Assembly (NCBI GenBank): GCA_950097015.1
Contig: CATNEN010000012.1
Coordinates: 682,001-746,000, forward strand
Direction of reading: 5' to 3'
DNA from: Macrostomum hystrix
Taxonomy: Eukaryota > Animalia > Platyhelminthes
Length of the DNA stretch: 64,000 nucleotides
Below, piece by piece: positions 2,800-51,290 of the stretch (the first letter of the stretch is position 1; each line of letters starts with the position of its first letter). The notes under the pieces were generated by a model. The model worked only from the letters and a program-made list of their open reading frames with translations. It had not been told where the DNA came from and ran no database searches. The position numbers and the translations under genes are program-made.

Positions 2800-3513
2800 C
2801 GATTAACACAGCTACGGTTAAATGACACCTAGCAGAAAGAGAGCTTACGCAAAACATTGACGCAAAAATGAAATGCAAGACTGGGAAGAGAAACCTCTAG
2901 GGATTGAGTTTGCAAACCCCCGGTCCCAGTGTACTCATTGGGATCACAGTGACTCTATGCTCAGAGCCTTTGAGATAAGTTTTGCACCGGTTGCTTGGAT
3001 TCCGTTTCGATTTATTCGAACGCCTTTCCAAATACTCGTAGTTCACCCATTTTGGAAGACTATAAAAAACTAGGATCGCGAGATTCATAGGGAGGGGTGA
3101 ACATCAGGTCCAGACAAATAATAGTCGCGTCACGGAGTGAGTGTGCGATTGTAAGGCAACGATGAAAGCTTGAAACTCAGTAGAGGTGGAGGAAGCTCAA
3201 TCCAAGCCTCTCCTAAGTCCGCCTACTCCCTCTCAGTCTAAGCGCCAACCTCATCCACTATCCACCCCTCTCTGTCTCTCTGTCCAAACCAAGCCTAGCC
3301 CGTTCTGTGTTTGACGAGCCGGTGGGGGGGGGAGGCCGTGTAACTAGGGGAGGCAGGCTATGGACATGGCATTTTCTATGCCCAGTGTTAAATAAGCCTG
3401 TGTAGCTGGCTGTTAAAGAGCTATTGTGGTATTGTGACCGAGCAGGCTCTTTAGCTTCCACTGGCTCAGTAAGCAGCAGCAACAACAGAAGCGGCAGCAG
3501 CAGGGACATTCAC

Positions 3514-6500
3514 ATGAAATCTGAAGCACACACAGCAACTCAGATTGTGTGGGAACTCTGCTTTAAGTGCTCCTCGTGTTACACTAAACGAAAGGTGAGC
3601 TGAAACACGCAAAACTTTCTTGTAGGAGTTACTCTCCTGGGCATTTTTTACAATACTTACAAATTTTATCGATCCAAAGACCAAAAAGTACTATTGCTTC
3701 GTAGTGTCAGATACTTTGGATACTATCCATGTATAGTATATTATGGTCGGTGGTAGTGTCAGATACTTTGGATACTATCCATATATAGTATATGATGGTC
3801 GGTGGTAGTGTCAGATACTTCGGATACTATCCATATATAGTATATGATAGTCGGTGGTAGTGTCAGATACTTTGGATACTATCCATGTATAGTATATGAT
3901 GGTCGGTGGTAGTGTCAGATACTTTGGATACTATCCATATATAGTATATGACGGTCGGTGGTAGTGTCAGATGGTCTGACAGAATGGTGTTTGGTAGTGT
4001 CAGATGGTCTGACAGAATGGTGTGTGGTAGTGTCAGATGGTCTGACAGAATGTTGTTTGGTTGTGTAAGATGGTCTGACAGAATGGTGTTTGGTAGTGTC
4101 AGATGGTCTGACAGAATGGTGTGTGGTAGTGTCAGATGGTCTGACAGAATGGTGTGTGGTAGTGTCAGATGGTCTGACAGAATGGTGTGTGGTAGTGTCA
4201 GATGGTCTGACAGAAGGGTGTGTGGTAGTGTCAGATGGTCTGACAGAAGGGTGTGTGGTAGTGTCAGATGGTCTGACAGAATGGTGTGTGGTAGTGTCAG
4301 ATGGTCTGACAGAAGGGTGTGTGGTAGTGTCAGATGGTCTGAAAGAATGGTGTGTGGTAGTGTCAGATGGTCTGACAGAATGGTGTGTGGTAGTGTCAGA
4401 TGGTCTGACAGAATGGTGTGTGGTAGTGTCAGATGGTCTGACAGAATAGTGTTTGGTAGTGTCAGATGGTCTGACAGAATGGTGTGTGGAAGTGTCAGAT
4501 GGTCTGACAGAATGGTGTGTGGTAGTGTCAGATGGTCTGAAAGAATGGTGTGTGGTAGTGTCAGATGGTCTGACAGAATGGTGTGTGGTAGTGTCAGATG
4601 GTCTGACAGAATGGTGTGTGGTAGTGTCAGATGGTCTGACAGAATGGTGTGTGGTAGTGTCAGATGGTCTGACAGAATGGTGTGTGGTAGTGTCAGATGG
4701 TCTGACAGAATGGTGTGTGGAAGTGTCAGATGGTCTGACAGAATGGTGTGTGGTAGTGTCAGATGGTCTGACAGAATGGTGTGTGGTAGTGTCAGATGGT
4801 CTGACAGAATGGTGTGTGGTAGTGTCAGATGGTCTGACAGAATGGTGTGTGGTAGTGTCAGATGGTCTGACAGAATGGTGTGTGGAAGTGTCAGATGGTC
4901 TGACAGAATGGTGTGTGGTAGTGTCAGATGGTCTGACAGAATGGTGTGTGGTAGTGTCAGATGGTCTGACAGAATGGTGTGTGGTAGTGTCAGATGGTCT
5001 GACAGAATGGTGTGTGGTAGTGTCAGATGGTCTGACAGAATGGTGTGTGGTAGTGTCAGATGGTCTGACAGAATGGTGTGTGGTAGTGTCAGATGGTCTG
5101 ACAGAATGGTGTGTGGTAGTGTCAGATGGTCTGACAGAATGGTGTGTGGTAGTGTCAGATGGTCTGACAGAATGGTGTGTGGTAGTGTCAGATGGTCAGA
5201 TGGTCAGTGTCAGATTATATAGAAGTCCTTGGGTCTTATAAGCTTAAGGGGTATTGATGCAACTTCAAATAGAACAAGAAAGAACAAGTGCAGACAAATA
5301 AGCTAGCAGCATCACAATTTATTGCCAGACTGTACTAGACCAGTTCAAGAATAACAATTAATCGATAATTATCGAAATTGCTCGCCTTGAACGCCCTCAG
5401 CTTATCATCGTGCTGACGGTACTGGCCCTATCGGGCCTGCTAGTGAGCTGGTGCCATATCCACAGAGTTAAGTCTACAACCAGGATCCCTAGAGTCTGGT
5501 TTAGCCGCTACCCAAGCATTGCCTTGGCAGGAAATGAAGTTAGCAGCGGCAGCATCAGCGCTCACTTGCTGCCGGCGACAACTGCAACTAAATCGACAAC
5601 GGCAAAGCCAAGGATTCCGCTGACACCAGCGGGCGTGCCCAAGGTCATTCATTTTATCTACCGGGCCAGTGACGTCATCGAGCCGTACCGCGAGGCCCTG
5701 CGCTCCTGCGTGACCCAGAACCCGGACTGGCGGGTGGTGCTGTGGACTGACGCCGCCATCCAGGCCTTCATGCAGCGCCACTTCCCGCACCAGATCAAAG
5801 TGTTCGCAGCTTTTCCACACAAAATTCAACGCTCTGACGCGATTCGGTACCTGATCATGTACAAGTTCGGCGGTGAGTGGACACTGTCTGGTATTAATGT
5901 GTGTGTGTTCTCAGGGGTTAATGGAGTGGAATTTTGGGAGTGGAATAATCAGTATTAATCAGTATATCAGTAGTGCATAAATACGTAAGGGCTCTCTAGT
6001 CTAATTAGTAATATATTGTACTTTACCTTACCAGGATGTTTCAAACTCTGTTGGTTTGAAAGATATTTAGCTAACATATAGTTGTCTTGTGGTAGTCCCA
6101 GATTTATTCATTTTATGGTTTTCTCAAGCGTCCATTTTAACTGACTAAATCCTCATTTAAAGAAACTGCTTCTGAGTTCTAGTCTTTCCTAAATCCTAAT
6201 CATTCCAAATCCCAGGCAATCCCACAGCAGTACCTACCTGCATCTGGTGGTTCTCTGTTCTTCCCTATATCTCGCCCTCTTCCCCTTTTTTGAGGCTTCA
6301 GGTAAATTGCATTGTCTAACCTAAAGTGGATTTCACACCAACCACTGCTGAGCATCGATTGCATTGTGCAGAGCATTCCGCCTTGCCGCATTCTGCAGCA
6401 TTGTACTCAATTTAAATGCTGAAATTGCAGGCCTGTACATGGATTTGGACATGACCTGTCACGGCACCCTGCTGCCCAGTCTGGCTCCCTACAGCTGCTT

Positions 6501-35067: not shown

Positions 35068-37216
<2,149 letters not shown>

Positions 37217-42736: not shown

Positions 42737-43529
42737 TCACTGGGAGCTCTTCTTGTTCAGCCGTGCCCAGGGGTATTGCGCCAGTGTCTGCTCTCGGACC
42801 TGATCGGCGCAGTAGGCTAGCAGAGTGTCCCGGGTGCAGAAGCCGCAGCAGCAGTCCAGGAATGGGTCCCGCTGACCCGGGTTGGGCCGGAGGCACGGGT
42901 TCTTGTCGACCGAGGACTTCACAGCCGGCGATTTCGGGCCTGAAATTCGGCCAGAATGACTAATGTAGTTGAAAAAACAGCAGATGCAAAATGCGCATTA
43001 ATCACAGCTCGAACAATGGAATCAGTTCAGCTCACTCCTAGACGGCTGCCGGAACAGGTCCAGGACTGTGTCCTTCTCGGGCATGTAGACTCCGCCATGG
43101 TTTTTGCAGGTGCGAATCATGAGGAACACGAGCGGCATTCCGCATGCTTTGTAGAGCCTCGATGCGGGCCGGCCGGACTGCAATGAGGAAAAAGGGATTT
43201 TCCGAATGTTACTAGCAGCCAAATTTCTGCGAAGAGCAACGAGCTCGTGAATGAGCATCGCCCACCTCGAAATGGCGATCAAACCGACCCGTCTGCCTGG
43301 CCTGCATGTCTTGAGTGTTCCTGGAACCGCCACTGGTGGCAACTGCGCCAAGAGGCAGCAGCAGCAGCAGCAGCAGCAGCAGCGGCAGCGATGGGTGCCG
43401 CAAACCGTGAGTGCATGAAGCAGTTGGTGTGGCTGAAGTCCTGCAATGTCAGATGTGAGGAGTGTGATACGCATCTCAACTGCATCTGGGCCAAATAATA
43501 CAGACAAAATACAGACAAGCAATTTACAT
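42737..43529 (-). CDS. Insulin/IGF-like peptide precursor, about 173 aa, 4 coding exons
   Basis: Exons (minus) 43529-43528 (AT), 43440-43266, 43177-43036, 42939-42737; introns 87, 88 and 96 bp, all GT-AG and in phase; 522 nt. Leu9 signal peptide; B chain CGMPLVFLMIRTC (C-G-x10-C); A chain CCCGFCTRDTLLAYC (CC-x3-C-x8-C). The first exon is inferred. Confidence 0.85.
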
Positions 43530-43674: not shown

Positions 43675-43681
43675 ATTTATA
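43675..43681 (-). promoter_or_regulatory. TATA box (TATAAAT) of the insulin-like gene, with a GC box and CCAAT motif upstream
   Basis: About 150 bp upstream of the inferred first donor; GGGTGGGCGG near 43695 and CCAAT near 43777. Confidence 0.55.
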
Positions 43682-43814
43682 GGCCGTAATCTCCGGGTGG
43701 GCGGATTAGTGAGTTGCTGGGCCCTGCAATCAGACAGGCGGCCCAGCCCAACCCGGGCTGGAGAGCAGTGTGCCAACCAATAGATGGAGGCTCGTACAGG
43801 TGGGCTCGCTCAGC

Positions 43815-44118
43815 TGTTCTAACACGTTGTTGTTCTTCGAACAGGTGATTGGGTCCTGGTCTAACAGGTTGACGATTTTGAACAGGTTATTGGGTCCTTG
43901 TCTAACAGGTTGACGATTTCGAACAGGTGATTGGGTCCTTGCTTGTCTAACAGGTTGACGATTTCGAACAGGTGATTGGGTCCTGATCTAACAGGTTGAC
44001 GCTTTTCGTACATATGATTCGGTCCTGGACTAACACATTTATCTTCTTCGAACAGGTGATTGGGTCCTGGTCTAACAGGTTGACGATTTCGAACTGGTGA
44101 TTCGGTCCTGGTCTAACA
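43815..44118. repeat. Degenerate ~41-bp tandem repeat
   Basis: Unit about TTCGAACAGGTGATTGGGTCCTGGTCTAACAGGTTGACGAT, about 7 copies. Confidence 0.88.
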
Positions 44119-44755
44119 GTTAAGCAGTGCCATATAATTATGGTCTATTAACTTGTAAAGCAGAATGACGAATATCAGTCATGATTAAAAGGTTATATAT
44201 TTAAAACGGCATTCCTTGAAGATCGTCACTATTGTAGGGACCAATGCGGATCACGTGGATGACTGCAGCAGTCTGGCATTAGTTCAGCACCATTCGATAC
44301 GTGCCAAGGAGCCTGACACACCTGGCCATACAAGTCCGGCCACTATAAAATTGGCTTATTTATGCGCGAGATTCTCCTTAAGGTGCATCGGCGCAGTTTA
44401 TAGAATCGAAGCACCGATAACAGTTCACTTTCCTCTCGCTCGTGGCACATCTGCCAATGCTGGCACCGATTTGGTCGAATTCGAGACCAAGCCCAAGATT
44501 TAGTCCACGCTTCAGCATCAGCTGCTTGTTAAAAAAGGGTACAATAGTTATGAAAAGTTATGATCCTCGCTTGGAACAATGCCTGAAATTATAAGCTTAT
44601 CAACTGATACCTATTTAATGGGTCTAGAGATCGATAAATAGAAATTACTGTACACCTAGCCTAGCTTGGCCAGATGTACAGCCAGTAGCACAGCCGCAGC
44701 ATGTTGTGTACACCTGTACAGTCCGTGAACTGGGAGGCCGCCACAACGAGGCGCT

Positions 44756-44952
44756 TTCGACGTTGAGAAGTCTCCTATCCCTGCAGTGCGATTCGACGTT
44801 GAGAAGTCTCCTATCCCTGCAGTGCGATTCGACGTTGAGAAGTCTCCTATCCCTGCAGTGCGATTCGACGTTGAGAAGTCTCCTAACCCTGCAGTGCGAT
44901 TCGACGTTGAGAAGTCTCCTAACCCTGCAGTGCGATTCGACGTTGAGAAGTT
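44756..44952. repeat. 36-bp tandem repeat, about 5.5 copies
   Basis: Unit TTCGACGTTGAGAAGTCTCCTATCCCTGCAGTGCGA. Confidence 0.93.
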
Positions 44953-46132: not shown

Positions 46133-46680
46133 GATGCAGGTCATTCTGCAGGCAATCATGCAGGTCATTCTGCAGGCAATCATGCAGGCCATTCTGCAGG
46201 CAATCATGCAGGCCATTCTGCAGGCAATCATGCAGGTCACTCTGCAGGCAATCATGCAGGTCATTCTGCAGGCAATCATGCAGGTCATTCTGCAGGCAAT
46301 CATGCAGGCCATTCTGCAGGCAATCATGCAGGCCATTCTGCAGGCAATCATGCAGGTCATTCTGCAGGCAATCATGCAGGCCATTCTGCAGGCAATCATG
46401 CAGGTCATTCTGCAGGCAATCATGCAGGTCATTCTGCAGGCAATCATGCAGGTCATTCTGCAGGCAATCATGCAGGTCATTCTGCAGGCAATCATGCAGG
46501 TCATTCTGCAGGCAATCATGCAGGTCATTCTGCAGGCAATCATGCAGGTCATTCTGCAGGCAATCATGCAGGTCATTCTGCAGGCAATCATGCAGGTCAT
46601 TCTGCAGGCAATCATGCAGGTCATTCTGCAGGCAATCATGCAGGTCATTCTGCAGGCAATCATGCAGGTCATTCTGCAGT
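46133..46680. repeat. 24-bp minisatellite (TGCAGGCAATCATGCAGGTCATTC)
   Basis: About 23 copies. Confidence 0.96.
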
Positions 46681-47276: not shown

Positions 47277-49083
47277 CCATAGAATACGAGCTAACAACCG
47301 TACTAGCTATACCATTACCATAGAGTACGAGCTAACAACCGTACTAGCTATACCATTACCATAGAGTACGAGCTAACAACCGTACTAGCTATACCATTAC
47401 CATAGAGTACGAGCTAACAACCGTACTACTCGTAGCTATATTATTACCACAGAATACGAGCTAACAACCGTACTACTCGTAGCTATATCATTACCATAGA
47501 GTACGAGCTAACAACCGTACTAGCTATATCATTACCATAGAATACGAACTAACAACCGTACTAGCTATATCATTACCATAGAGTACGAGCTAACAGCCGT
47601 ACTACTCGTAGCTATATTATTACCACAGAATACAAGCTAACAACCGTACTAGCTATATCATTACCATAGAGTACGAGCTAACAACCGTACTAGCTATATC
47701 ATTACCATAGAGTACGAGCTAACAACCGTACTACTCGTAGCTATATTATTACCACAGAATACGAGCTAACAACCGTACTACTCGTAGCTATATCATTACC
47801 ATAGAGTACGAGCTAACAACCGTACTAGCTATATCATTACCATAGAGTACGAGCTAACAACCGTACTAGCTATATCATTACCATAGAGTACGAGCTAACA
47901 ACCGTACTAGCTATATCATTACCACAGAATACGAGCTAACAACCGTACTAGCTATATCATTACCACAGAATACGAGCTAACAACCGTACTAGCTATATCA
48001 TTACCGCAGAATACGAGCTAACAACCGTACTAGCTATATCATTACCATAGAGTACGAGCTAACAACCGTACTAGCTATATCATTACCATAGAGTACGAGC
48101 TAACAACCGTACTAGCTATATCATTACCACAGAATACGAGCTAACAACCGTACTAGCTATATCATTACCATAGAATACGAGCTAACAACCGTACTAGCTA
48201 TATCATTACCGCAGAATACGAGCTAACAACCGTACTAGCTATATCATTACCACAGAATACGAGCTAACAACCGTACTAGCTATATCATTACCATAGAGTA
48301 CGAGCTAACAGCCGTACTACTCGTAGCTATATTATTACCACAGAATACAAGCTAACAACCGTACTAGCTATATCATTACCATAGAGTACGAGCTAACAAC
48401 CGTACTAGCTATATCATTACCATAGAGTACGAGCTAACAACCGTACTACTCGTAGCTATATTATTACCACAGAATACGAGCTAACAACCGTACTACTCGT
48501 AGCTATATCATTACCATAGAGTACGAGCTAACAACCGTACTAGCTATATCATTACCATAGAGTACGAGCTAACAACCGTACTAGCTATATCATTACCATA
48601 GAGTACGAGCTAACAACCGTACTAGCTATATCATTACCACAGAATACGAGCTAACAACCGTACTAGCTATATCATTACCACAGAATACGAGCTAACAACC
48701 GTACTAGCTATATCATTACCGCAGAATACGAGCTAACAACCGTACTAGCTATATCATTACCATAGAGTACGAGCTAACAACCGTACTAGCTATATCATTA
48801 CCATAGAGTACGAGCTAACAACCGTACTAGCTATATCATTACCACAGAATACGAGCTAACAACCGTACTAGCTATATCATTACCATAGAATACGAGCTAA
48901 CAACCGTACTAGCTATATCATTACCGCAGAATACGAGCTAACAACCGTACTAGCTATATCATTACCACAGAATACGAGCTAACAACCGTACTAGCTATAT
49001 CATTACCATAGACTACGAGCTAACAACCGTACTAGCTATATCATTACCGCAGAATACGAGCTAACAACCGTACTAGCTATATC
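47277..49083. repeat. 41-bp minisatellite with 48-bp variants
   Basis: About 43 units; the variant pattern repeats with a 715-bp period. Confidence 0.96.
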
Positions 49084-50004: not shown

Positions 50005-51290
50005 TATGAGGGTGAGCCAAAAGTTTCCGGAATTTTTTCAGCTAGATCTTCGAACAACTTTTGTTTTTTGTAAACCTCAAAAGTGGCAGTCATCCACTAG
50101 CATGCTTGCATGCATGCTTCTATCTCTTTTACTCAGAATCAGCGCATCTCTTCAGCTCTGCTTGAATAGCCGCTATAGTAATAATAATGGACATGCCTAA
50201 ATACGAATGGCGAGCTATTCTGCTCAACCACTTTCATGCTGGAAGAAATGCAGCCGAGGCACATCGCGAGCTATCAAGTCTGATGGGTCATCATGCACCC
50301 TCTAAGTCTACGATGCACGAATGGTTCGCTCGCTTTGCAGAGGAGGACTGGAACCTGTCCGACAAACCAAGGTCAGGTCGACCCCCCACTGCCGATCAAG
50401 GTGATGTTCTCCATGCCCTAGAGGACAACCCGGAGAACAGTGTGCGCAAGTTGTCGGCCACAACTGGAGTGCCCTACAGCACAGTTCGACGGAGCCTGCA
50501 TGATGCAGGCAAGGTTCCGAAGAAGCCGACTCTGGTACCCCACGAGCTGACTCCCCAGCAGATGGGCACTCGGGTCGAGATGGCAACTTCGAACCTCCTC
50601 CAGGCCCACTCGCCATATTTCCTAAAGTCCATCATTGTGCAGGATGAGAAGTGGGTCGCATATGAAAATCCTATCGCATCGGCAGTCTGGGTCAATGCTG
50701 ATGAAGAGCCACCAATCTGCTCCAGGTGAGACCCCCACTGTGGGAAGGAGCTCTTGTCCTTCTGGTACTGCTCATCGGGCCCCATCTTCTGGGAGCTCAT
50801 CCCGCATGGTGTGGCTGTCACTGCTGCTGTCATCTGCGAAGAACTGAAGCAAGTTGCCCACCGGCTGCGATCCGTGTGCCCAGGGCACCGGGACAAAGTT
50901 TATTCTGTTTGACAATGCCCGACCACACAAGGCTAGAATCACCCAAGCCAAACTCGCGAGCCTCGGCTTCAGCGTTTTGCCTCACCCACCTTACTCGCCG
51001 GACCTCGCCATGTGACTACCATGTGTGCAGATCCCTCCAGAACTTCTGTGATGGTCGGCGGTTTGCGAACAAGCAGCATGTGGAGTTAGCAGTGCAGGAA
51101 TGGATCGACTCTAGGCAAAGGAGCTTCTGGATGGAGGGGATTGAGGCACTGCCTATGAGATGGGAGAGAGTAAAGGTCTTGAATGGAAACTACCTTAAGG
51201 TATGTTACGTTTTAATCTGTTGACTTTGAATGCGAAAGTTGACTATGTTGATGCAATAAAATTCCGGAAACTTTTGGCTCCATCCTTCTA
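50005..51290 (+). mobile_element. Full-length mariner (Tc1/mariner, DD34D-type) transposon
   Basis: TA at both ends; TIRs TGAGGGTGAGCCAAAAGTTTCCGGAATT and AATTCCGGAAACTTTTGGCTCCATCCTTC; about 1.28 kb. Confidence 0.93.
50187..51223 (+). pseudogene. Disrupted mariner transposase
   Basis: HTH region, (W>L)VPHEL, QDEKW, FDNARPH, PYSPDLA..DY. One in-frame TGA (50727-50729) and two frameshifts (+1 near 50900, -2 near 51009). Confidence 0.9.

What the first reader, a model, noticed from the sequence alone, without database searches (positions are those of the whole stretch)
42737..43529. Hidden IGF-like insulin-family gene with an 8-cysteine pattern
No single ORF shows it, but four phase-matched exons give signal peptide, an N-terminal extension, B chain (ACGMPLVFLMIRTC), a C region, A chain (DCCCGFCTRDTLLAYC) and a 23-aa tail. 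Beyond the six canonical insulin cysteines there are two extra: one in the C region (KNPC) and one within CCC, suggesting a fourth disulfide. No KR/RR pair flanks the C region, so it may stay single-chain and IGF-like with a D/E-type tail. Flatworm insulin-like peptides are few and divergent (e.g. planarian ilp-1, which acts on neoblasts and germline), so this is a candidate growth or regeneration hormone that automatic annotation would likely miss.
Basis: partly seen in the sequence, partly recalled or inferred. Interest (0 to 1): 0.75.

Follow-up and report, generated by a model that had tools for sequence, protein, structure and literature searches.

The report
Divergent flatworm insulin-like peptide gene
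This is a real, spliced gene for a secreted insulin-family hormone in a Macrostomum flatworm. It is a divergent but ordinary member of the eight-cysteine flatworm insulin-like peptides, and its counterpart in M. lignano is already in UniProt as an insulin/IGF-domain protein.

Summary
On the minus strand, exons 43177-43036 and 42939-42737 carry the insulin B-chain motif (C-G-X10-C, then GGVY) and A-chain motif (CCC-X2-C-X8-C). They are joined in phase by a 96-nt GT-AG intron. Upstream, exon 43440-43266 codes a poly-Leu signal peptide.

A whole-library HMMER search with the last exon found one relative: Macrostomum lignano A0A1I8HS64/A0A1I8HI28, which UniRef names 'IlGF domain-containing protein'. 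It is collinear with exon 3, one split codon and exon 4, without a gap, and keeps all eight cysteines.

The same genome matches the published M. hystrix assembly in size and contig count. It holds three Pfam-positive insulin genes with the same CCC motif, the same extra upstream cysteine and the same phase-1 intron. The CCC-X2-C-X8-C signature is already published for schistosome ILPs.

This lineage has lost both dibasic cleavage sites and has a conserved tail, so a single-chain IGF-like product is plausible but unproven. The start codon (ATG split across intron 1) is only one of several formal solutions.

Pfam does not score the exons or the orthologue, and the fold searches were blank.

Earlier notes of this scan record other ILP genes on other pieces of this genome. 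Verdict: new member of a known kind, of modest interest.

The parts
43675..43681 (-). TATAAAT, a possible TATA box about 150 nt upstream of the proposed ATG
   Evidence: Found by direct reading. It is a single 7-mer, so support is weak and it is inferred only.
43528..43529 (-). Proposed end of exon 1: the 'AT' of a start codon split by intron 1 (donor AT|GTAAAT). Uncertain.
   Evidence: One search found 47 formal ATG/donor/acceptor solutions. This one is among the three nearest, has the donor closest to the usual GTRAGT consensus, and has an intron length (87 nt) like the other two introns. There is no transcript evidence.
43441..43527 (-). Intron 1 (87 nt, GT..AG), proposed
   Evidence: GC 0.41
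43266..43440 (-). Exon 2: signal peptide (poly-Leu h-region, AVA|TS-type cleavage motif) and N-terminal extension
   Evidence: The translation is. The poly-Leu frame and the FDRHFE end align to the N-terminus of M. lignano P0004 (local score 49 against 23.8 +/- 4.3 for shuffles, 0 of 500 reaching it).
43178..43265 (-). Intron 2 (88 nt, GT..AG, phase 0)
   Evidence: a pyrimidine tract lies before TTGCAG
43036..43177 (-). Exon 3: B domain (C-G-X10-C, then GGVY) and the first half of the C domain
   Evidence: Translation. It is 53% identical to P0004. hhalign against the paralogue B exons gives P 5.4e-5. GC3 is 0.79.
42940..43035 (-). Intron 3 (96 nt, GTGAGC..TTTCAG, phase 1) in the C domain
   Evidence: All three paralogues have a phase-1, 81-96-nt intron with a GTGAG donor at the matching place. 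Removing it leaves exon 3, one codon and exon 4 collinear with P0004.
42737..42939 (-). Exon 4: rest of the C domain, extra Cys (NPC), conserved GQRDPFL linker, A domain CCC-X2-C-X8-C, 23-aa tail with KK, and the TGA stop
   Evidence: Translation. It matches P0001 at E 3.1e-9, 43% identity. hhalign against the paralogue A exons gives P 4.1e-5. GC3 is 0.83.

Best explanation
Window 43529-42737 (minus strand) is an intact gene of about 173 codons for a secreted insulin-like peptide. The genome matches the Macrostomum hystrix assembly.

Shown:
- Three GT-AG introns of 87-96 nt separate a signal-peptide exon, a B-domain exon and a C/A-domain exon.
- The product is the orthologue of the M. lignano 'IlGF domain-containing protein' A0A1I8HI28/HS64.
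- It is a distant paralogue of three Pfam-positive insulin genes of the same genome, with the same cysteine layout and the same phase-1 intron.

Inferred:
- After signal-peptide removal the protein folds into the insulin core: a B helix plus two A helices, held by the three canonical disulfides.
- A fourth disulfide links the middle-run cysteine of CCC to the cysteine 13 residues upstream. This staples the strongly conserved NPC..GQRDPFL extension onto the A domain.
- Both dibasic sites that flank the C domain in the paralogues are lost here and in M. lignano, and the C domain keeps its exact length. The hormone therefore most likely stays single-chain (IGF-like), perhaps trimmed at the KK near the C-terminus.
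- It probably signals through an insulin-receptor-type tyrosine kinase, of which the genome has at least one, to control growth, stem cells or germline as planarian ilp-1 does.
For: - Motifs, phases and splice sites were read directly.
- The orthologue was found by exhaustive HMMER and named by UniRef. The alignment is gap-free across the exon 3/4 junction, with 53% and 43% identity and 8 of 8 cysteines kept.
- Three PF00049-positive loci exist in the genome. They carry CCC plus an upstream Cys and a matching phase-1 intron.
- Profile-profile matches to their B and A exons give P 5.4e-5 and 4.1e-5, in the right order.
- Local HMMs rank these exons first.
- phmmer of P0004 against the PDB returns only proinsulin (E 0.7-0.9, spanning B to A). 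The orthologue-only profile returns only the DILP5 A chain.
- ESM Atlas neighbours by features and by structure are insulin clusters.
- The AF2 model of P0004 places helices on the B domain and twice on the A domain.
- GC3 periodicity fits the proposed frame.
- An IR/IGF1R-type kinase lies next to two L domains on contig C9.
- The CCC-X2-C-X8-C signature is published for schistosome ILPs (PMC5391603).
Against: - Pfam PF00049 gives no hit for the single exons, for P0001 or for P0004, and the six-frame PF00049 scan of the genome did not pick this locus.
- The AF2 model is of low confidence (pLDDT 52), and Foldseek and VIA-align found no insulin fold.
Splicing is supported only by comparison with a protein model of another species, which is itself an automatic prediction without a start Met.
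- Exon 1 and the start codon are ambiguous, with 47 formal solutions.
- Single-chain status, disulfide pairing and the receptor are inferences.
Confidence: 0.85

Rival explanations
1. It is the same gene, but the product is a classical two-chain insulin. The C domain would be excised at monobasic sites: the conserved R/K at the end of exon 3 and the conserved K/R three residues before the extra cysteine. The N-terminal extension would be removed at the conserved basic residue five positions before the first B cysteine.
For: Basic residues are conserved at these three places between the window and M. lignano. The paralogues keep a basic residue at -5 from the B cysteine and are clearly two-chain types with KR, RRR or KK sites.
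Against: None of the monobasic sites has a conserved upstream basic residue at P4, P6 or P8 in both species (read). The paralogues' KR is K-S here and G-A in M. lignano. The C domain has exactly the same length in both species and is 34% identical.
Confidence: 0.3
2. It is an unexpressed or decaying duplicate (pseudogene) of an insulin-like gene, whose open frames persist by chance.
For: No transcript evidence was obtained. No in-frame ATG lies directly upstream of the signal peptide. Pfam does not recognise it.
Against: All exons are open, and all three introns have canonical sites in matching phase. GC3 is 0.79-0.83. Eight of eight cysteines and the GQRDPFL block are kept at only 43-53% overall identity to M. 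lignano. That is the pattern of purifying selection on the fold.
Confidence: 0.07
3. The cysteine pattern is a coincidence, or the last exon belongs to another cysteine-rich family, such as a zinc-ribbon protein like mitochondrial ribosomal protein bL32m.
For: phmmer of exon 4 alone against the PDB gave only bL32m, at E 0.6-1.0.
Against: That match is not significant and lacks the second CxxC. A bL32 match above the Pfam cut-off lies elsewhere in the genome (C38, 25.9 bits). The full orthologue matches only proinsulin. The B exon, signal peptide, intron phase and paralogue profiles all fit insulin.
Confidence: 0.02

Closest known systems
Macrostomum lignano 'IlGF domain-containing protein' (UniRef100_A0A1I8HI28 / A0A1I8HS64)
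   Same: It is the orthologue. It has the same order of poly-Leu signal, extension, B domain, C domain of identical length, NPC..GQRDPFL..CCC-X2-C-X8-C and a tail with a dibasic pair near the end. Identity is 53% and 43% over exons 3 and 4.
   Different: It comes from another species. It has about 35 extra residues before the B domain, ending in FFFQ, which may be a retained intron in that automatic model. Its tail ends GKR (a possible amidation signal) rather than KK. No Met is recorded there either.
The three PF00049-positive insulin-like genes of the same genome (C2:6.768 Mb, C38:4.889 Mb, C7:9.734 Mb)
   Same: They share C-G-X10-C, then G.(V)Y; CCC-X2-C-X8-C with Y before the last Cys; an extra Cys upstream of CCC; and a phase-1 intron of 81-96 nt in the C domain.
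   Different: They keep KR before the A extension and RR, KK or RRR after the B domain. They end 1-11 residues after the last Cys. The extra Cys is 10-11 residues before CCC rather than 13. They score above the Pfam cut-off, whereas this gene does not.
Parasitic flatworm ILPs (SjILP/SmILP, EmILP1/2) and planarian ilp-1
   Same: The published A-chain signature CCCX(2)CX(8)C and the gene structure with B and A exons split by an intron match (PMC5391603). They are secreted ligands of flatworm insulin receptors (PMC3923246).
   Different: Sequence similarity to these proteins was not tested here, because no sequences were on hand by reference. The schistosome introns are 8-12 kb, against 96 nt here.
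Single-chain IGF-type peptides (vertebrate IGF-I/II; insect DILP6/IGFLP, the latter from my own knowledge)
   Same: There is no dibasic processing at the B/C and C/A borders, and there is a C-terminal extension beyond the A domain. IGF-I/II are among the PDB hits of the family profile.
   Different: The C domain is about 32 residues up to the extra cysteine, against 8-12 in IGFs. A fourth disulfide is likely. No direct homology closer than to insulin was seen. Single-chain status is not shown.

Membership tests
Insulin/IGF/relaxin superfamily (Pfam PF00049, SMART IlGF) | B-domain motif C-G-X10-C with Leu/Val core positions and G-x-aromatic after the second Cys | tested here: met
   ACGMPLVFLMIRTC followed by KNHGGVY. 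The Cys, Gly, Leu, Cys and Gly columns are invariant with the paralogues.
Insulin/IGF/relaxin superfamily (Pfam PF00049, SMART IlGF) | A-domain motif CC-X3-C-X8-C with a hydrophobic residue at -4 and Tyr/Phe at -1 from the last Cys | tested here: met
   CCCGFCTRDTLLAYC, aligned with the paralogues. It also fits the PROSITE insulin signature as I recall it, which was not checked against the database.
Insulin/IGF/relaxin superfamily (Pfam PF00049, SMART IlGF) | Score above the curated Pfam threshold | tested here: not met
   No PF00049 hit at E<=10 for the exons or for P0001, and none at E<=0.01 for P0004. The locus was not picked by the genome scan. The UniRef name of the orthologue implies a SMART IlGF hit, which was not rerun here.
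Insulin/IGF/relaxin superfamily (Pfam PF00049, SMART IlGF) | Demonstrable homology to accepted members | tested here: met
   hhalign of the orthologue pair against the B and A exons of Pfam-positive paralogues gives P 5.4e-5 and 4.1e-5. PDB hits of P0004 and of the orthologue profile are to insulin-family chains alone, but weak (E 0.6-0.9). The family profile that includes the paralogues hits proinsulin at 6.5e-8.
Insulin/IGF/relaxin superfamily (Pfam PF00049, SMART IlGF) | Signal peptide and precursor order signal-B-C-A, with an intron in the C domain | tested here: met
   Poly-Leu h-region and an AVA|TS motif in exon 2. Phase-1 intron in the C domain, as in the three paralogues. No signal-peptide predictor was run.
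Insulin/IGF/relaxin superfamily (Pfam PF00049, SMART IlGF) | Insulin fold (B helix, two A helices, three disulfides) | tested here: inconclusive
   The AF2 model of the orthologue has helices at the expected places, but pLDDT is 52. Foldseek and VIA-align were blank. The ESM Atlas structure neighbours are insulin clusters with TM 0.45/0.63.
Flatworm eight-cysteine ILPs | CCC-X2-C-X8-C A-chain signature plus one further cysteine | tested here: met
   The signature is published for schistosomes (PMC5391603). It is present here with the extra Cys 13 residues upstream. The same layout occurs in three paralogues and in the orthologue.
IGF-type single-chain peptides | No proteolytic removal of the C domain; D/E-type C-terminal extension | not testable with these tools
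   Dibasic sites are absent in both species, and the tail is conserved with a terminal KK/KR. Actual processing needs peptidomics.
Ribosomal protein bL32 (PF01783) | Zinc-ribbon CxxC...CxxC and a Pfam score | tested here: not met
   There is only a non-significant PDB match (E 0.6), and the second CxxC is absent. A bL32 match above the cut-off lies elsewhere, on C38.

The most novel reading that the evidence does not exclude
Macrostomid flatworms keep a distinct insulin-superfamily hormone that is never cut into two chains. It would be an IGF-like single polypeptide whose long C domain and conserved NPC..GQRDPFL segment are stapled to the A domain by a fourth disulfide. It would work alongside classical two-chain ILPs on the same receptor(s). 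That would give a lophotrochozoan parallel to the vertebrate insulin/IGF and insect DILP/IGFLP split.
Probability: 0.35. Interest if true: 0.5.

Novelty: new member of a known kind. Interest (0 to 1): 0.3.

Why it matters
The finding adds one well-supported gene model to the insulin-like peptide set of a flatworm used for work on regeneration, stem cells and reproduction. It also shows that at least one ILP lineage is divergent enough to escape the Pfam insulin model. Both cleavage sites are lost in two species, which makes this the best candidate in this genome for an IGF-type ligand. The M. lignano orthologue can be tested directly by RNAi or transgenesis. Beyond that it is an ordinary family member. 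The eight-cysteine pattern and the CCC motif are known flatworm features, and earlier notes of this scan record several other ILP genes and an insulin receptor in the same genome.

Tried and rejected
- Pfam on each exon, on the 186-aa read-through ORF, and on P0001 and P0004: no family.
- Word-index protein search with the B exon (region of the 186-aa ORF) and with the A exon: no candidates. A third search with P0001 found only itself.
It was useless.
- Paralogue search with each exon in the own genome: only self hits, so the gene is single-copy.
- AF2 of the orthologue with a shallow alignment gave pLDDT 52. Foldseek PDB and VIA-align wide gave no meaningful match. The second fold job was not used, because no deeper alignment was available.
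I could therefore not fetch the DNA or transcript source of the orthologue, nor look for transcript contigs.
- bL32m reading of exon 4: rejected.
- Start codon donated by the spliced leader, which ends in ATG in Macrostomum (PMC10468722): the only two AG acceptors before the signal peptide (exon starts 43440 and 43432) put such an ATG in the poly-Ala or poly-Cys frame, not the poly-Leu frame that the orthologue supports. Rejected by reading.
- Alternative without intron 2 (the 186-aa ORF, poly-Cys frame): rejected, because the orthologue has poly-Leu.
The orthologue, taken by its id, served as proxy.

Full report
**1. What is in the sequence**

Read on the minus strand, window 43177-43036 is an open 47-codon stretch. 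It contains A-C-G-M-P-L-V-F-L-M-I-R-T-C followed by K-N-H-G-G-V-Y. That is the insulin B-chain spacing C-X11-C, with Gly after the first Cys, Leu-Val at the core positions, and a Gly-x-aromatic turn after the second Cys.

The stretch ends at a GTGAGC donor (43035). Ninety-six bases further on, a TTTCAG acceptor (42941-40) opens 42939-42737. With the split codon, this exon reads on through K-N-P-C, a linker, D-C-C-C-G-F-C-T-R-D-T-L-L-A-Y-C (CC-X3-C-X8-C), a 23-residue tail and TGA.

Upstream, 43440-43266 codes a 58-residue stretch with nine consecutive Leu and an A-V-A|T-S motif. It ends at GAG|GTGGGC in phase 0, opposite the phase-0 acceptor TTGCAG|TCC at 43178/43177.

That ATG is followed in the DNA by TAA, but it overlaps a good donor (AT|GTAAAT). 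Spliced to the acceptor before 43440, which supplies a G, it gives Met in the poly-Leu frame.

The four pieces add up to 522 nt, or 173 codons plus the stop.

**2. Is it more than chance?**

- Third-position GC is 0.79 and 0.83 in exons 3 and 4. Second-position GC is 0.47 and 0.52, and overall GC in the three introns is 0.41-0.48.
- I built HMMs only from the B exons and only from the A exons of three other insulin genes of this genome. Among 4,486 six-frame segments of the window and unrelated loci, these HMMs rank the two exons first (E 0.019; best domain E 0.025).
- Scaling to the whole genome and requiring both hits adjacent and in order gives roughly 0.002 expected chance pairs. This is my own estimate from those numbers.

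**3. Relatives**

- Word-index searches were blank.
- Family scans were also blank, so I used the exhaustive HMMER search with exon 4. It returned one real relative, P0001 (E 3.1e-9). Two other hits are repetitive proteins that I take as unrelated.
- P0001 and its cluster mate P0004 are UniRef100_A0A1I8HS64 and A0A1I8HI28 of Macrostomum lignano, named 'IlGF domain-containing protein'.
- Aligned by reference, exon 3 matches P0004 at 53% identity and exon 4 at 43%. Exactly one P0004 residue is left between them, which is the split codon, and there is no gap. All eight cysteines are kept.
- The distance from GG(V/L)Y to the extra cysteine is 32 residues in both species.
- P0004 also has L-P-L-L-L-L-L-L and, further on, G-P-F-D-S-Y-E-E opposite the window's G-R-F-D-R-H-F-E at the end of exon 2. 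This supports the poly-Leu frame and an intron at that point.
- P0004 has about 35 extra residues there, ending F-F-F-Q. That looks like a translated pyrimidine tract plus CAG, so the automatic model may retain an intron.

**4. The family in the same genome**

- G000 has 220,453,370 bases in 42 contigs. The published M. hystrix assembly is about 220 Mb in 42 contigs (PMC10468722).
- A six-frame PF00049 scan finds three loci above the cut-off, on C2, C38 and C7, but not this one.
- Each of those three has a B exon (C-G-X10-C), an A exon with C-C-C-X2-C-X8-C, and a further cysteine 10-11 residues before the CCC, just after a K-R site.
- In each, the best-consensus donor (GTGAGT or GTGAGC) and acceptor give a phase-1 intron of 81-96 nt, four to five codons before K-R. 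The window gene has a phase-1, 96-nt intron with a GTGAGC donor, seven codons before the aligned K.
- Profile-profile comparison of the orthologue pair with the paralogues' B exons and A exons gives two independent matches in the right order (P 5.4e-5 and 4.1e-5).
- The 'two extra cysteines' are therefore a family trait. CCCX(2)CX(8)C is stated as the schistosome ILP signature in PMC5391603.
- The 'C-region' cysteine is better read as part of an N-terminally extended A domain.
- The segment N-P-C-x-R-P-x-x-G-Q-R-D-P-F-L-x-C-C-C is the best-conserved part of the protein between the two species (13 of the first 18 positions, counted). This argues that it belongs to the mature hormone.

**5. Membership in the insulin superfamily**

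- The cysteine motifs, core residues, precursor order, intron and homology to accepted members are all met.
- The curated Pfam score is not met. There is no PF00049 hit for the exons, P0001 or P0004.
- phmmer of P0004 against all PDB sequences returns only proinsulin, aligned from the B to the A domain, at E 0.7-0.9.
- The orthologue-only profile returns only the DILP5 A chain, at E 0.6.
- With the paralogues added, the profile hits proinsulin at 6.5e-8 and IGFs. That mostly reflects the paralogues.
- ESM Atlas neighbours of P0004 residues 90-185 are insulin clusters, both by features (0.85, a lead only) and by structure.
- AF2 on P0004 with a ten-row alignment has pLDDT 52. It places helices on the B domain (94-113) and twice on the A domain (160-166, 171-180).
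- Foldseek and VIA-align found nothing, so the fold test is inconclusive.
The orthologue, by its id, was the proxy.

**6. How it most likely works**

Shown:
- The gene has an intact, spliced structure and a secretory-type N-terminus.
- It has insulin B and A domains.
- The genome holds a receptor with two L domains and an IR/IGF1R-type kinase on C9 (best PDB match IGF1R at 1.7e-46).

Inferred:
- There are three canonical disulfides plus a fourth, between the NPC cysteine and the middle-run cysteine of CCC.
- The paralogues have RRR, KK or RR-KRR after the B domain and KR before the A extension. The window gene has none, and M. lignano has none either: the KR position reads K-S here and G-A there.
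- With the C domain fixed in length and a conserved tail ending in KK (KR in M. lignano), a single-chain IGF-like product is the best guess, at about even odds.
- Two-chain processing at conserved monobasic residues is the main rival.
- The physiological role (growth, stem cells, germline) is by analogy with planarian ilp-1, which I know from the literature but could not read here.

**7. The 5' end**

- No in-frame ATG precedes the signal peptide.
- Enumeration gives 47 ATG/donor/acceptor combinations within 1.7 kb.
- The split ATG at 43529 is among the three nearest. It has the donor closest to consensus and an intron length like the other two. A TATAAAT lies about 150 nt upstream.
- An ATG donated by the spliced leader (PMC10468722) would fall in the wrong frame at both available acceptors.
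- The first exon therefore stays a proposal.

**8. Rivals**

- Pseudogene: unlikely, given the open exons, GC3 and selective conservation.
- bL32m-like zinc ribbon: rejected.
- Chance: rejected (section 2).

**9. Verdict**

This is a real insulin-like peptide gene. It is the orthologue of an already catalogued M. lignano protein and a divergent paralogue of ordinary flatworm eight-cysteine ILPs. Earlier notes of this scan record other ILP clusters (eight- and ten-cysteine) and an insulin receptor on other pieces of this genome.

It is a new member of a known kind.

Noticed in passing
G000 contigs C1 24.5-27.4 Mb, C9 1.03-1.09 Mb, C3 4.4-4.8 Mb and others: The receptor L-domain family (PF01030) matches at 45 or more places. 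Many are long intron-less open frames of about 580 aa arranged in clusters. This looks like a large lineage-specific expansion of L-domain proteins, separate from the insulin receptor.
   Followed up: no
L038 (G000:C9:366000-375999), minus strand 2885-4547; L domains at C9:378962-379096 and 384422-384742: A receptor gene with two L domains and three kinase exons. Its best PDB matches are IGF1R and insulin receptor (1.7e-46), so it is an insulin-receptor-family tyrosine kinase. A second pair of L-domain matches lies at C33:248917-252172.
   Followed up: partly
window 43355-43389: A (CTG)n/(GCA)n triplet repeat of about 12 units codes the poly-Leu core of the signal peptide. All three frames of this strand are open across it (poly-Leu, poly-Ala, poly-Cys), which creates a misleading 186-aa ORF (43582-43022) that runs into the B-domain exon.
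   Followed up: yes
window 43814-44119, 44756-44951, 46134-46679, 47277-47475: Four tandem-repeat arrays lie just upstream of the gene, with periods 41, 36, 24 and 41 nt. The 24-nt array has about 23 near-identical copies and gives long spurious ORFs on both strands.
   Followed up: no
window 50187-50726 (+), continuing to about 51223: An ORF with a Mos1-type mariner HTH_48 domain (2.5e-13). It is probably a mariner-family transposase remnant. The following 165-aa ORF has no Pfam match.
   Followed up: partly
window 36878-37189 (-): The first coding exon of a ubiquitin-conjugating enzyme (UQ_con, 3.7e-40) lies about 5.5 kb downstream of the insulin-like gene on the same strand.
   Followed up: partly
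P0004 residues about 56-90 (M. lignano A0A1I8HI28): The M. lignano model carries about 35 residues with no counterpart in the window gene. They end in F-F-F-Q right before the B domain, which looks like an in-frame retained intron in that automatic gene model.
   Followed up: no
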